From positions 1,302,001 through 1,366,000 of the forward strand of contig NEEC01000019.1 in NCBI GenBank assembly GCA_002189035.1: DNA of 64,000 nt, written 5' to 3'. The stretch comes from Utricularia gibba. Taxonomy: Eukaryota; Plantae; Magnoliophyta. The notes below the pieces were generated by a model. It was not told the origin of the DNA and did no database searches. It saw nothing but the letters and a program-made list of their open reading frames with translations. The translations under genes and the position numbers were made by a program. Positions 8,904 to 62,235 of this stretch are shown one piece after another; position 1 is the first letter of the stretch; every line of letters starts with the position of its first letter.

Positions 8904-9004
8904 TGGGCCCACGGGAATAGGCTCATTTGGGCCTCAATTTGATCTGGATGTCTGATATAGGCCTGAGTACCTATCTCGGCCCATGATTCTGATAGAGGCC
9001 CAAT
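8904..9004. promoter_or_regulatory. Site II (TGGGCY/GGCCCA, TCP-binding) cluster upstream of NOP53
   Basis: Several TGGGCC/GGCCCA copies within about 100 bp, 90-190 bp before the ATG of a ribosome-biogenesis gene. Confidence 0.55.
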
Positions 9005-13829: not shown

Positions 13830-13960
13830 GTTATTGGGCCTTGCCCATAATGTTGCCTTGGACAAAGGCCCATTATGAGTTATTGGGCTACGCCCGGAAT
13901 ACTTTCCTTGGGCTACGACCCTGCTATATTGGACTAATTGTTCATTCTGCTGGGCCGGTC
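13830..13960. promoter_or_regulatory. Site II-rich bidirectional promoter (YbaK / adenylosuccinate lyase)
   Basis: Multiple TGGGCY/GGCCCA; only 338 bp between the two divergent ATGs. Confidence 0.55.
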
Positions 13961-14038
13961 ATCACATAAGGTGTTAGATGATTTTTGTATGTGGTTTCGC
14001 TTTTTCTTTCCAAAACTAAGCGCGAGTCAGCATCGAGC

Positions 14039-17412
<3,374 letters not shown>

Positions 17413-23486: not shown

Positions 23487-23585
23487 TTGGGCCACAGAAT
23501 GGGAAATCTATTTGGGCCACGATGGGATCATCGATATTTGGGCTTCCTACAAAAATGAGCCCCATCGCGCTAACGGGCCTACCCA
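23487..23585. promoter_or_regulatory. Site II cluster, including a short direct repeat (TTTGGGCCAC x2), upstream of the PPR gene
   Basis: TTTGGGCCAC twice about 25 bp apart, plus TTGGGCT and GAGCCCA. Confidence 0.45.
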
Positions 23586-29689: not shown

Positions 29690-29812
29690 CGCATTGGGCT
29701 AGCCACGAAAGAAAGAGAAATTTTTAAATGGGCCGTGCATTGTTTGGGCTCAAAAGTTCGAAAACCTATGAAATTGGTCCGGCCCATTTTATATGGCATT
29801 GAGCCCAACTCG
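29690..29812. promoter_or_regulatory. Site II cluster upstream of RNJ
   Basis: TTGGGCT, ATGGGCC, GGCCCA and GAGCCCA within about 120 bp. Confidence 0.5.
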
Positions 29813-44162: not shown

Positions 44163-44514
44163 ATGCCACCGAAATCCTTAGCGTATTTGATAGTGGGTCT
44201 TCTGCTCCTCCACCTTTTGAGTCCCTCCGCCGCCGGCCGACACCTCCCAGCACAAGACTCCGCCGCCGAGGTCAGTCCAATTCCGCCCGATACAGAAAGA
44301 TAGCAGGATTCGGGTGCTTCACTAGTGTTACTGTTTTTCTTTCTTTCGGTTGAACTGAAAGTCTGTTTTTGTTGTGGGGATGAAGAAGCAGGCGGTCGCG
44401 GCGGCGGAAGACGACGGCGGGTGCCGGGGAATCAGCGAAGACGATTGCTTGATAAGACGAACCCTTGTCGCTCACCTCGATTACATCTACACGCAGTCAC
44501 GCCGCAAACCGTAG
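44163..44514 (+). CDS. PSK: Phytosulfokine precursor, 2 exons
   Basis: Exon 1 (44163-44270) encodes signal peptide MPPKSLAYLIVGLLLLHLLSPSAAGR, donor GAG|GTCAGT. Exon 2 (from 44386/44389/44392) encodes ..CRGISEDDCLIRRTLVAHLDYIYTQSRRKP*; YIYTQ at 44482-44496. Confidence 0.95.
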
Positions 44515-45501
44515 CTTAGGAAAAATTACAGAAGCATTTTATGTAATTTCTGTCTGTTTTTTTCAGTCAAATCCGTTCCCTTACTTTTTATCTCCTATTT
44601 TTTATTTAATATAAAAAAATAATTTTAATTTTAAAATAATAATTTTATTAATAAATAAAATTTGTGAACTATTTTATTTAATCACGATTATATCGAATTC
44701 ACGGAACAAAATATTTTACATACTGATTTAAGTAGTGTTTTGAAATATTTCTTCGGATTATTTCTACTTTTGAAATAACAAAAATAATTTATGCACGGAA
44801 CACAATCAATTTTTACTTTTAATTATAGTAAAAATACTTTTAAAACCAAGTTATATGAATAGTAAAAATCAAAAAGTAATAATATTATTACTTTTATAAA
44901 TTATTTATACTTCTACTTTATATTTTTCGAAAATTAGAAATAATCCGGATAAATATTCCGGAACACTAATTTAATTTTAGATTTTATTTACTACTCAATT
45001 TATTAAATTAGTAACATATACCAAATATGGCAAAAAAATTAGGGAGGCACACATGATAAATGAGAGGGCCCCATCCAACCATTTCCGCGTTCAAACTTCA
45101 GACTCGCTCTTGGGAGTTGGAGCGTTGTCTGAGGACACGGTCAGGACACGTTAGGTGTCAATGTGGTGGGCTTTATCCTATGTATTTTAAAATATACTTG
45201 TATTATTTAATATAATAATATATATTTATATTTCAAAAAATATATATCTATATATATTAAAAATTATACTTATTATATATACATGTTACTCAATGCATAC
45301 GAAATTCATGTATCAAATACAATTTGAGCTGTTAATAAATATAAGTAATCAACTTAAATTTATTAATCACATTGTGTGTATTAATTATTAAAAAAAGAAG
45401 TTAATTCATCTTGCCTGGATGCTGGGCTGGGCTGGGTAAAGCCCAATGATGCTGGAAGAGAATAATCCGCGTGCAGTCGTTGCTTCGACTGATTCGATTC
45501 G

Positions 45502-45975
45502 ATGTTTGGGCGGAGAAAATTTCTTTCTCTGCCGCTGGTCATCGGCGCCACCGTGTGAGCTCTAGCTCCTCCGCTCTCTTTTCTTTATATGGTGTTCGTA
45601 GATGAAACTGCGGCTGGCTGATTGCTTCATCCTATTCAAGGAAATGCTCCTTTTTGGTGTTAGGAAATGGAATCAAAACTTACCTTTTGATGGTTCTGGG
45701 GAAAACTGTTGAAGCTTTTATGTCTTCAATTGCAGAGTATTTGGAATGCTTTCGTTTGTGAATGTGCCATGAATCCGTTTTTGTGCATTGATTCATCCAC
45801 GTCATGAGAATAGGCGATAGCACTCTTTTTCTTGTTGTTTCACTGTGCTTTTGTTTGTTTCAGGATAGGAGTTGTCTCTGGGAAAGCCATATTTGGCCCC
45901 CCTCTTGAAGAGTATTGGAAGAACAAGAAGCTCCAAGAAGAACAAGAAGCAGCAGTGGATAAAAAACTGGAATGA
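45502..45975 (+). CDS. 54-aa single-TM microprotein, PIGBOS1-like, 2 exons
   Basis: Exon 1 45502-45554 (donor GT|GTGAGC) and exon 2 45864-45975 (acceptor TTTGTTTCAG) join in frame: MFGRRKFLSLPLVIGATVIGVVSGKAIFGPPLEEYWKNKKLQEEQEAAVDKKLE*. Confidence 0.8.
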
Positions 45976-46354
45976 TAGTTTCTTTTCTTTGAAATTATGA
46001 ATTAGATTCTGAGCTTCTTCGTTCTTTCAAGGCATGATTTCTAGAGCAGAGACAGTGAAAATGTCCTTGTTTACATAAATAACTGATCTTTGGCAGTTTC
46101 AGCTTTGTTGTATCTTGTTCTAAGTTGGAAAGACAGAAGTTACTCTCACCAGATCTCAGTTTCATTACCACAAGAAAGCATAAACAAATGTCAGTTGTTG
46201 GATATGATACACAAACAAGTTTCATATACGGCGGTTGCCGCCTGACCGCACCGGCTTAAGAGCAAGAATATGCAAATCAGATCAAATAAACACAACAATC
46301 CGTAGCAGAGGGCTATATAGCACACTAAATCAGAATCGAATTATGGCATTGGTT

Positions 46355-47869
46355 TCAGCTCTTGGACTTGGAATGCTTGACGAGCCAATCGATGACCTGA
46401 TCGATGTTGGTTGAGTTCTTGCAGGAGATCATGAAGCAGCAAACCTCCCGGTCTGTTATGGACTTCAAATCCCTGCATCATATGACACAGTAGCTTTGCA
46501 TCAGTCGGGTCTTCTGAGGCATCTTCTAGGACACAGATATTTTAAACTTACATTTGATCACTCAATGCTTGCTTAGATAGGGATTGGGGCTTGTCAATCT
46601 TGTTCCCAAGCACAAGTAGAGGAATGCCGCTTAGTGATGGCTTGCTCAACAGATCATGAAGTTCGCCTCTGGAGTTGGAGATATTGTCATGATCAGCAGC
46701 ATCAACCACATACCTGCATTTTTTATGATGTAGGAAGAAAACGGAATGTTGAGTGAATCATTTACTTGAAACCAGAGATAACAAATCATTAGCAGCAATG
46801 GCAAGGTACTGAGAGCAGGAAAAAGCACATACACAATTGCAGAAACTGCACGGCAGTATCGCTCCCACATACTCCGAAATCGGGGCTGGCCACCAAGATC
46901 CCATAATTTAATTGTGACATTCCCTTTAGTGACCTTCCGCATGTTGAACCCCACCTGAAGAATCAAACCAACTTTCATGAAAGGCTTCGAGGATGATACT
47001 AAATATGAGAAAATCCGGGCAAGAATTCAGCAAGAAACTTTACCGTAGGAATCATATCCTCACTATAACCACCAGTCTGCAGATGTAGAAAACAAAAAAC
47101 AGTAAGTTTTGATGATTTAAACAAACGGATTAAGCATGAAAGTCTTACTGAATTACACACTTACAGCAACAACATTTACAAGGGACGTTTTCCCTGCATT
47201 CTGAAGACCTATTAAAGATAGCTCCATCTCTTGCTTGAAGAAAAGGCTGTTTGTACAACCAAAAGACTTAGTCAAGCTTCAAACATTACACATCCGCTCG
47301 CATAATATAGTTTATGCTATCCACGCACACTTGAACCCAATTGTTAAATATAAAGGGGGAGCTAAAGATGGGGTAGAGACAAAAACTTGATCATAGATGA
47401 TCCAAGAAACAGACGCAATCTCATCGTATTCTGATATAATTATAATTGCTCTTGGCAGCTTGATTATTTGAATCATGCTTGTTGGATTTTAATGAAAATT
47501 AAGAAAAGATAGATGCTTCCAGTAGTTACAACACGATAAACAAACAGGGGTTCCAAAGATTACAAACACAACTAAAATCGAAACTTGATGAAAATTTATA
47601 GATTCAATCGTTAAGGTAAAGGCACAGAAAGCTTCGGTTCACAGCTTATATCTACTACACAACCCCAATTTCACGATTCACCTCCACACCGCATTCTGTA
47701 TCAACTCAAGGCAAATCGAGGAAAAAGACAGTTTTTCTGATAAATTTCCCATCCCATTAGAAACAAATTCAGCCTACAGATAAGGGAAACAGAAATTAAA
47801 GCCCAGAGAATCAATACGCCCGGTTAAAAACCTTCTAAGCCAATTGAGAAAAGCTTCCCAGAGACCCAT
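46355..47869 (-). CDS. ARL8: ADP-ribosylation factor-like GTPase 8, 6 exons
   Basis: [85 protein letters not shown]. Confidence 0.98.
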
Positions 47870-62164: not shown

Positions 62165-62235
62165 ATTGGGCTTTAGGGATACCGAATCATCTCTCGGCCC
62201 ATATAAATTGGGCCCAATCAGCCCTTGGCCCAAGA
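62165..62235. promoter_or_regulatory. Site II-rich bidirectional promoter (nCBP / 5-FCL)
   Basis: TTGGGCT, GGCCCA x3 and TGGGCCCA within 70 bp; 362 bp between the divergent ATGs. Confidence 0.6.

What the first reader, a model, noticed from the sequence alone, without database searches (positions are those of the whole stretch)
45502..45975. Hidden two-exon 54-aa microprotein resembling animal mitochondrial PIGBOS1
Seen: an in-frame splice (GT|GTGAGC ... TTTCAG|G) gives MFGRRKFLSLPLVIGATVIGVVSGKAIFGPPLEEYWKNKKLQEEQEAAVDKKLE. It is absent from the ORF track because both exons are short. Established: human PIGBOS1 is a 54-aa outer-mitochondrial-membrane microprotein (recalled as [32 protein letters not shown]...) linked to ER-mitochondria contacts and the unfolded protein response via CLCC1. 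Inference: the plant peptide has the same length and layout (MF-RR N-terminus, one TM with G-x-x-x-G, aromatic-x-P, E-x-Y, charged K/E tail). It may be a cross-kingdom homolog whose plant function I am not aware of being described; annotation could easily truncate it or omit it.
Basis: partly seen in the sequence, partly recalled or inferred. Interest (0 to 1): 0.7.

Follow-up and report, generated by a model that had tools for sequence, protein, structure and literature searches.

The report
Plant PIGBOS1-family membrane microprotein gene
This is a real, expressed and strongly conserved two-exon plant gene for a 54-residue single-pass membrane protein of the family named after human mitochondrial PIGBOS1; public databases already list the family in plants, but nobody has tested what it does there.

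Summary
There is an ATG at 45502. Exon 1 is 45502-45554, a 309-nt GT..AG intron is 45555-45863, and exon 2 is 45864-45975 (17 codons, one split codon, 36 codons, then the stop).

- **Expression:** the exact junction 45554>45864 stands in assembled contigs of three public runs from two studies.
- **Family:** exon 2 alone passes Pfam's threshold for PF23670 "PIGBOS1-like" (42.5 bits against a cutoff of 27).
- **Orthologs:** proteins of about 54 aa, including Arabidopsis At5g65880, are annotated across seed plants as "transmembrane" or "hypothetical" proteins.
- **Gene structure:** five angiosperms share the identical intron position (53 nt, phase 2). Three of them also share an upstream phytosulfokine gene, as the window does.
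- **Constraint:** synonymous sites are saturated while the core motif barely changes.
- **Range:** a plant-only profile reaches ferns and diatoms.

The link to animals rests on Pfam's curated model. I could obtain no animal sequence with a reference, so no direct plant-versus-animal comparison was run.

The likely mechanism is a signal-anchored mitochondrial membrane adaptor, by analogy with human PIGBOS. Its only known human partner, CLCC1, has no identifiable plant homolog. The family membership is not new; the plant function is open. The joined 54-mer was never sent to any tool.

The parts
45423..45445 (.). Cluster of three site-II-type motifs (TGGGCT, TGGGCT, AGCCCA) 57-79 nt upstream of the ATG; likely core promoter element
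   Evidence: Pairs of the same motif lie within 300 nt upstream of the ATG in the Aristolochia, Vitis and Arabidopsis orthologs, against a background of about 0.3 per 300 nt. A promoter role is inferred from general knowledge of plant site II/TCP elements and was not tested.
45491..45501 (+). Minimum 5' UTR (transcribed sequence upstream of the ATG); the true start lies further upstream
   Evidence: Spliced contigs of X6 and X7 begin at 45491 (table 8). Contigs cannot give a transcript start.
45502..45554 (+). Coding exon 1 (53 nt: 17 codons plus 2 nt of the split Val codon): a basic N-terminus (M-F-G-R-R-K) and the first half of the transmembrane helix
   Evidence: Exon 1 is also 53 nt in five angiosperm orthologs.
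45555..45863 (+). Intron, 309 nt, GT..AG, phase 2. It is 40% GC and its last 30 nt are 70% pyrimidine. If retained, the frame stops one codon after the split Val codon (18-residue product)
   Evidence: (joint in X1, X6, X7).
45864..45975 (+). Coding exon 2 (1 nt + 36 codons + TGA): the second half of the TM helix with G-x-x-x-G, the break F-G-P-P, the conserved L-E-E-Y-W motif and a charged K/E tail
   Evidence: (PF23670, E = 7.3e-11).
45976..46169 (+). 3' UTR; spliced contigs end at 46150-46169, overlapping the 3' end of the convergent minus-strand GTPase gene
   Evidence: table 8 (records 2, 6, 9) and the poly-T loose end at 46140.

Best explanation
**Shown.** Window 45502-45975 is the coding part of a genuine, transcribed and spliced nuclear gene. 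It is the ortholog of Arabidopsis At5g65880 and encodes a 54-codon member of Pfam family PF23670 (PIGBOS1-like).

**Layout (from sequence and a low-confidence ortholog model).**
- A short basic N-terminus (M-F-G-R-R-K).
- One moderately hydrophobic helix of about 22 residues with a G-x-x-x-G packing motif. The helix is split by the intron.
- A helix break at F-G-P-P.
- A second, charged helix that begins with the near-invariant P-L-E-E-Y-W motif.

**Inferred mechanism.** By analogy with human PIGBOS, the protein is most likely inserted as a signal-anchor into a mitochondrial membrane, most probably the outer one. The few N-terminal residues would be buried and the C-terminal helix would face the cytosol. 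It would probably self-associate through the small-residue face of the helix and act as a small adaptor. The juxtamembrane motif would hold a partner protein.

That motif falls on Pfam profile positions 30-32 (the E-E-Y of L-E-E-Y-W). A triple-alanine change at residues 30-32 abolishes CLCC1 binding and function in the human protein. This mapping assumes the 54-position profile follows human numbering.

Plants have no identifiable CLCC1/Brl1/Brr6. The plant partner must therefore be different or unrecognisably diverged.
For: **Gene model and expression.**
- The exact GT..AG joint 45554>45864 stands in contigs of three runs from two studies. A poly-A-derived loose end on the neighbouring gene shows that these runs hold RNA.
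- Between accessions of the same organism there is 1 substitution in 141 coding nt against 17 in 484 intron/UTR nt (one-sided Fisher p = 0.06).

**Family.**
- Exon 2 alone hits PF23670 at 42.5 bits against a cutoff of 27.
- All 46 relatives found with exon 2 carry PF23670, and most are 52-60 aa.
- Orthologs score 55-63 bits.

**Orthology.**
- The intron position is identical (53 nt, phase 2, in codon 18) in Aristolochia, Vitis, Arabidopsis, Spirodela and Persea.
- A phytosulfokine precursor gene lies directly upstream in Aristolochia, Vitis and Arabidopsis and in the window (PF06404, E = 1.5e-12).

**Constraint.**
- Exon-by-exon Nei-Gojobori counts give pS 0.47-0.90 against pN 0.09-0.25.
- In the 18-codon core, pN is 0-0.07 while pS is 0.62-0.92 in all pairs but one.

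**Depth of the family.**
- The plant-only profile finds 117 representative clusters at E <= 1e-3 among 1.84 billion. They include ferns and diatoms.
- Plant versus non-plant profiles align with hhalign probability 99.4%, E = 5e-21.

**Shape.**
- AlphaFold2 of the Aristolochia ortholog gives helix 6-27, a break at 28-31 and helix 32-51.
- The best 19-residue hydropathy window is residues 10-28, mean 2.1.

**Human properties used for the analogy.**
- TM at residues 7-29, cytosolic C-terminus, outer-membrane signal-anchor, homo-oligomer, and loss of CLCC1 binding in the 30-32 AAA mutant (PMC6814811).
- Plants lack identifiable CLCC1/Brl1/Brr6 (bioRxiv 10.1101/2025.07.21.665908).
Against: - No localisation, topology, interaction or phenotype data exist for any plant member. 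No paper in the library mentions At5g65880 or links PIGBOS to plants.
- The plant-only profile retrieved no recognisable animal protein at E <= 1e-3, and no direct plant-versus-animal comparison could be run. The animal link rests on Pfam's curated model and on Atlas cluster labels.
- The structure model has low confidence (mean pLDDT 69).
- In human cells a second data set places PIGBOS1 with HIGD2A and complexes III/IV, which are inner-membrane partners (PMC8664129). Even the animal mechanism is therefore unsettled.
- Translation of the plant mRNA was not shown, since no Ribo-seq or peptide data were available here.
- The runs are labelled RNA only as a guess, and contigs give neither strand nor transcript ends.
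Confidence: 0.65

Rival explanations
1. The gene and family are the same, but the protein works in the mitochondrial inner membrane as a small assembly or stabilising factor of respiratory complexes III/IV, together with HIG1-domain proteins. It would not be an outer-membrane adaptor facing the cytosol.
For: - Human PIGBOS1-FLAG co-purified HIGD2A, subunits of complexes III and IV, and metabolite carriers (PMC8664129).
- The family reaches plants, ferns and diatoms. These lineages have the respiratory chain, and plants at least lack identifiable CLCC1. A respiratory role would explain such deep conservation better.
- The nearest non-family look-alikes in the Atlas are small subunits of cytochrome c oxidase and similar mitochondrial single-pass proteins. 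Their scores are below 0.9, so these are leads only.
Against: - Protease protection and split-GFP in human cells place PIGBOS in the outer membrane with a cytosolic C-terminus (PMC6814811).
- A family profile found no relative among chains of solved structures, which include many mitochondrial complexes (best E = 0.9). It is therefore not a recognised stoichiometric subunit.
Confidence: 0.22
2. The hydrophobic N-terminal segment directs the protein into the ER or secretory pathway, as a signal-anchor or a cleaved signal peptide. The plant protein would then be an endomembrane or secreted micropeptide, unrelated in location to human PIGBOS.
For: - One source names the Quercus ortholog 'Secreted protein'.
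- The layout of a basic N-terminus followed by a hydrophobic stretch also resembles a signal sequence.
- The gene sits next to a secreted-peptide gene (PSK) in four angiosperms.
Against: - The most conserved part of the protein is the hydrophobic helix itself and the residues just after it. That is unusual for a cleaved signal peptide.
- The family model covers this helix in chordate and plant clusters alike.
- Being next to PSK is microsynteny, not evidence of a shared pathway.
- The 'Secreted' label is an automatic name.
Confidence: 0.1
3. The plant/diatom family and animal PIGBOS1 are not truly homologous. Two lineages of short single-pass proteins converged on a similar glycine-rich helix and aromatic-proline juxtamembrane stretch, and Pfam merged them.
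For: - The plant-only profile did not reach any recognisable animal sequence at E <= 1e-3 in 1.84 billion representatives.
- Transmembrane segments are compositionally biased and the proteins are very short.
- The human CDS lies in one exon (PMC6814811), whereas the plant CDS is split.
Against: - The curated Pfam model scores plants far above its cutoff and also marks 80% of a Chordata cluster.
- Profile positions line up without gaps from the helix through the E-x-Y motif.
- Length, charge layout and helix position are the same as reported for the human protein.
- Intron gain or loss over this distance is ordinary.
Confidence: 0.08

Closest known systems
Human PIGBOS1 (PIGB opposite strand 1), a 54-aa mitochondrial outer-membrane microprotein (Chu et al. 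2019, PMC6814811)
   Same: - Same Pfam family, PF23670.
- Same length of 54 residues.
- Same order of parts: a short basic N-terminus, a single helix at about residues 7-29, then a charged C-terminal region.
- The plant L-E-E-Y-W motif falls on profile positions that include 30-32, the stretch whose alanine replacement abolishes human function. This assumes the profile follows human numbering.
   Different: - The human partner CLCC1 has no identifiable plant homolog.
- The human CDS lies within one exon, whereas the plant CDS is split by a phase-2 intron.
- The C-terminal tails share only their charged character.
- Location and function in plants are untested.
- No direct sequence comparison was run here.
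Arabidopsis thaliana At5g65880 and its seed-plant orthologs ('Transmembrane protein' / 'hypothetical protein')
   Same: - The core from I-G-V-V-S-G-K through Y-W is identical or nearly so.
- The intron position is identical.
- The upstream PSK neighbour is the same.
- The Pfam hit is the same.
   Different: - The window's C-terminal tail has one extra Lys after Y-W-K-N and ends in a K/E-rich stretch instead of the usual acidic/Ser-rich end.
- No experimental data exist for any of them.
Other mitochondrial single-pass microproteins (for example SMIM20/MITRAC7, COX6C-like subunits, DUF4516 proteins)
   Same: They are similar in size, with a single helix and charged flanks. They appear as weaker look-alikes by language-model features.
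   Different: They belong to different Pfam families and scored below 0.9 in the Atlas. They lack the G-V-x-S-G-x-Y/A-I-F-x-x-P-L-x-x-Y-W motif. They are leads only, not relatives.

Membership tests
Pfam PF23670 PIGBOS1-like | Score against the family HMM above the curated gathering threshold (27 bits) | tested here: met
   Exon 2 alone (window:45865-45972:+) scores 42.5 bits, E = 7.3e-11, on profile positions 16-48 of 54. Orthologs score 55-63 bits over positions 2-53.
Pfam PF23670 PIGBOS1-like | Conserved core motif G-[VI]-[VI]-S-G-x-[YA]-I-F-x-x-P-L-x-x-Y-W at the end of the helix | tested here: met
   The motif is present in exon 2. These columns are invariant or nearly so in 21 plant sequences, in 29 mixed sequences and in 23 non-plant sequences.
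Pfam PF23670 PIGBOS1-like | Microprotein of about 50-60 residues with one N-proximal transmembrane helix and a charged C-terminal region | tested here: met
   17 + 1 + 36 codons make 54. In orthologs the hydropathy maximum is at residues 10-28, and the model shows helix 6-27 and helix 32-51. The human TM is at 7-29.
Animal PIGBOS1 (orthology or homology to the human protein itself) | Significant direct or profile-profile similarity to metazoan PIGBOS1 sequences | tested here: inconclusive
   The plant-only profile search listed no recognisable animal protein at E <= 1e-3. A retrieval attempt found nothing, and no animal sequence with a reference was available for hhalign. Indirect support: a Chordata cluster carries PF23670 in 80% of its members.
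Animal PIGBOS1 (function) | Mitochondrial outer-membrane location with a cytosolic C-terminus | not testable with these tools
   This is known only for the human and rat protein (PMC6814811). There are no plant data.
Animal PIGBOS1 (function) | Binding of the ER protein CLCC1 through the C-terminal region, modulating the unfolded protein response | not testable with these tools
   One study reports that plants lack clearly identifiable CLCC1/Brl1/Brr6 homologs. If that holds, this feature cannot carry over unchanged.
Angiosperm At5g65880 orthogroup | Phase-2 intron after nucleotide 53 of the CDS, and an upstream PSK precursor gene | tested here: met
   The intron position is identical in five species and in the window. 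PSK lies upstream in Aristolochia, Vitis, Arabidopsis and the window. It was not seen in the Spirodela or Persea loci.

The most novel reading that the evidence does not exclude
The PIGBOS1 family dates back to early eukaryotes, since it occurs in plants, ferns, diatoms and animals. Its conserved juxtamembrane P-L-x-x-Y-W motif would bind a partner older than CLCC1, which is confined to metazoans. The ancestral job of this microprotein would then not be the CLCC1/unfolded-protein-response link described in human cells. It would be a core mitochondrial task, such as HIG1-linked assembly of respiratory complexes III/IV or an outer-membrane contact function, and the plant gene (At5g65880 orthologs) offers a CLCC1-free system to find it.
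Probability: 0.35. Interest if true: 0.6.

Novelty: new member of a known kind. Interest (0 to 1): 0.38.

Why it matters
The paper that characterised human PIGBOS stated that it has no paralogs or homologs, and its function was worked out from scratch (PMC6814811). The evidence here shows a real, expressed and tightly constrained plant member of the same curated family, with relatives in ferns and diatoms. The only known human partner is not identifiable in plants.

This makes one question directly testable: is the CLCC1/ER-stress role ancestral or a metazoan add-on? Knockout, localisation and interaction tests are easy in plants.

It is also a practical warning for annotation. The gene escapes ORF-based tracks, and several public genomes carry truncated or mis-started models.

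The family assignment itself is already in public databases, so the finding is confirmation plus context rather than discovery.

Tried and rejected
- It was repeated with window:45853-45972, which adds four intron-encoded residues by reference.
- I tried to retrieve animal PIGBOS1 with the most animal-like hit (P0145, region 15-60). The first try failed on the E-value limit, and the second returned only the query. All three searches of that tool were then used, so no animal sequence with a reference was obtained. The plant-versus-animal hhalign was left out.
- a family profile against all PDB chains gave only noise (E about 0.9).
- cluster look-ups named only 4 of 20 distant hits (two ferns, one diatom, one unnamed JGI protein). 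The taxa of most non-plant relatives stay unknown.
- paper searches found nothing on plant PIGBOS or At5g65880.
- the Cryptomeria locus had no DNA available.
- **Chance ORF:** rejected because of the RNA junction, the conserved intron and the substitution pattern.
- **Joined model:** the joined 54-residue model was never built or sent anywhere. Searches and substitution counts were done exon by exon, by reference. The exact-sequence look-up of whether this protein is already in public collections was therefore left out.

Full report
**Observation.** The sequence has an ATG at 45502. The open frame runs to a donor CGT|GTGAGC after 45554, and an acceptor TTTGTTTCAG|G lies before 45864. The frame then continues to TGA at 45973-45975. 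Exon 1 gives 17 residues and exon 2 gives 36 residues. One Val codon (GT|G) spans the junction, so the product has 54 residues.

The mechanical ORF list misses exon 1, because its frame stops after 18 codons inside the intron. Exon 2 shows up only inside a 47-aa TTG-start ORF. Every search used the exons by reference, and substitution counts were summed exon by exon.

**Expression.** One search for sequencing runs found nine runs of one organism from three studies. Four were laid on window 45000-46500.
- The joint 45554>45864 (GT..AG, skips 309) stands in contigs of X1, X6 and X7, which belong to two studies. The contigs reach from at least 45491 to 46150-46169.
- Contigs that still hold the intron lie at lower depth (4.5 against 15.5 in X1).
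- A poly-T loose end at 46140 and a splice-like break at 46472 belong to the convergent neighbour. They show that these runs hold RNA, although their records label them RNA only as a guess.
- X5 holds only an unspliced contig, 45526-46420. This may be DNA, pre-mRNA or antisense read-through of the neighbour.
- X5, X6 and X7 differ from the window at 17 intron or 3'-UTR positions in 484 nt, but at one coding position in 141 nt. That position is 45946, Glu>Gln in the variable tail. One-sided Fisher p = 0.06.

**Family.** Exon 2 alone hits Pfam PF23670 "PIGBOS1-like" at 42.5 bits, E = 7.3e-11, against a cutoff of 27. It covers profile positions 16-48 of 54.

A word-based search with exon 2 found 46 proteins. 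All carry a precomputed PF23670 hit and most are 52-60 aa. Sources call them "hypothetical" or "Transmembrane protein". They come from Vitis, Citrus, Acorus, Spirodela, Persea, Aristolochia, Papaver and others. A broader profile added Arabidopsis At5g65880, legumes, poplar, sunflower and the gymnosperm Cryptomeria.

The full-length orthologs begin with the same M-F-x-R-R-x-F-L-S-x-P and read straight through the position of the window's splice junction. This independently confirms the exon join.

Several public models are visibly wrong. Some have intron-derived N-termini, as in Acorus gramineus P0022 compared with A. calamus P0037. One has a 74-aa C-terminal extension, and one is named "Endoglucanase".

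**Orthology and constraint.** In Aristolochia, Vitis, Arabidopsis, Spirodela and Persea the annotated CDS is split by a GT..AG intron after exactly 53 nt. This is phase 2, inside codon 18, as in the window. Intron lengths range from 311 to 3620 nt. The diatom Fragilaria has its intron elsewhere.

A phytosulfokine precursor gene lies directly upstream in Aristolochia, Vitis and Arabidopsis. The same is true in the window, where 44374-44511 carries the Y-I-Y-T-Q peptide and hits PF06404 at E = 1.5e-12.

Nei-Gojobori counts give proportions of synonymous differences of 0.47-0.90, mostly saturated. Non-synonymous proportions are 0.09-0.25. In the 18 core codons of exon 2, pN is 0-0.07, while pS is 0.62-0.92 in all pairs but one (Vitis-Persea, 0.15).

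**Depth of the family.** A profile of 21 plant proteins was searched against 1.84 billion representatives. It found 117 clusters at E <= 1e-3 and 61 at E <= 1e-10. Named members include the ferns Pteridium and Psilotum and the diatoms Seminavis, Fragilaria and Pseudictyota. Many others come from unnamed metagenome or transcriptome contigs.

All share G-[VI]-x-S-G-x-Y-I-F-x-x-P-L-x-x-Y-W. Plant and non-plant profiles align at hhalign probability 99.4%, E = 5e-21 over 53 columns.

I recognised no animal protein among the hits, and an attempt to fetch one failed. The link to animal PIGBOS1 therefore rests on three things:
- Pfam's curated model;
- the model's length of 54, which equals the human protein's;
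- Atlas clusters in which PF23670 marks 95-96% of Streptophyta members and 80% of a Chordata cluster.

A review lists Drosophila CG34210 as the fly counterpart (PMC13240139).

**Anatomy and likely mechanism.** AlphaFold2 of the Aristolochia ortholog, run with the plant alignment, gives helix 6-27, a break at 28-31 (F-G-P-P) and helix 32-51, at a modest mean pLDDT of 69. The most hydrophobic 19-residue window is residues 10-28.

This matches what Chu et al. report for human PIGBOS (PMC6814811):
- a TM helix at residues 7-29 and a C-terminal region at 30-54;
- outer-membrane signal-anchor topology with a cytosolic C-terminus;
- self-association;
- loss of CLCC1 binding and of function when residues 30-32 are changed to alanine.

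If the Pfam profile follows human numbering, the window's E-E-Y falls exactly on positions 30-32. This is inferred from the equal length and from my recollection of the human sequence. The paper confirms only residues 33-42 of that sequence.

My best reading is therefore a signal-anchored mitochondrial membrane adaptor whose juxtamembrane motif holds a partner. The partner cannot simply be CLCC1, because a phylogenetic survey found no clearly identifiable CLCC1/Brl1/Brr6 homolog in plants (bioRxiv 10.1101/2025.07.21.665908).

A second human data set ties PIGBOS1 to HIGD2A and complexes III/IV (PMC8664129). This is the main rival for function and would fit the wide eukaryotic distribution. The family profile matches no chain of any solved structure, so the protein is not a recognised subunit of a solved complex.

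**What is shown and what is inferred.**
- Shown: the gene model, transcription with the predicted splice, family membership by Pfam's criterion, orthology to At5g65880, purifying selection, and presence in ferns and diatoms.
- Inferred: translation, mitochondrial location, topology, partner binding through the conserved motif, and true common descent with the animal protein.

**Novelty.** No paper in the library mentions At5g65880 or a plant PIGBOS. Chu et al. wrote that PIGBOS has no homologs. Pfam and the public protein collections nevertheless already place the plant proteins in the PIGBOS1-like family. The finding is a new, possibly unannotated member of a catalogued family with an unstudied plant function. 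It is not a new kind of thing.

Noticed in passing
window 44374-44514 (+): This is the last exon of a phytosulfokine precursor gene. It carries the Y-I-Y-T-Q peptide and hits PF06404 at E = 1.5e-12. The PSK-then-PIGBOS1-like gene order is conserved in Arabidopsis (next to At5g65880), Vitis and Aristolochia, but was not seen in the Spirodela or Persea loci.
   Followed up: partly
window 46140-46978 and beyond (-): A convergent Arf-family (ARL8-like) small GTPase gene lies here (PF00025, E = 5.6e-12 and 4.7e-10 for two exons). A poly-T loose end puts its poly-A site at about 46140, and an exon boundary lies at 46472. Its 3' end overlaps the PIGBOS1-like transcript end (46150-46169) by about 10-30 nt, a possible natural antisense overlap.
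   Followed up: partly
window 45526-46420: Run X5 holds only one unspliced contig. It runs from inside exon 1 through the intron and the 3' UTR into the neighbouring GTPase gene. It may be genomic DNA, pre-mRNA or antisense read-through of the neighbour; contigs cannot tell which.
   Followed up: no
window 45555-45560: If the intron is retained, the frame stops one codon after the split Val codon (GTG TGA), giving an 18-residue product. Intron-containing contigs exist at about a third of the spliced depth in X1.
   Followed up: no
window 8904-9002, 13835-14067, 23488-23544, 29695-29807, 62167-62232: There are further tight clusters of site-II-type TGGGCY motifs. The window has 67 in all against 46 expected, and only 1 of 100 shuffles reaches 67. 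They probably mark other housekeeping-type promoters.
   Followed up: no
P0022, P0001, P0002, P0004, P0047, P0190 (public orthologs): These are mis-called public gene models of this family. Some have N-termini read from the intron instead of exon 1, one Vitis riparia model has a 20-residue C-terminal extension, and one Actinidia protein of 54 aa is named 'Endoglucanase'.
   Followed up: partly
L005 3001-3386 (Fragilaria crotonensis): The diatom member has its single intron after nucleotide 20 of the CDS, not at the plant position. It also carries an N-terminal extension before the F-R-R-T-G motif that many non-plant members share.
   Followed up: no
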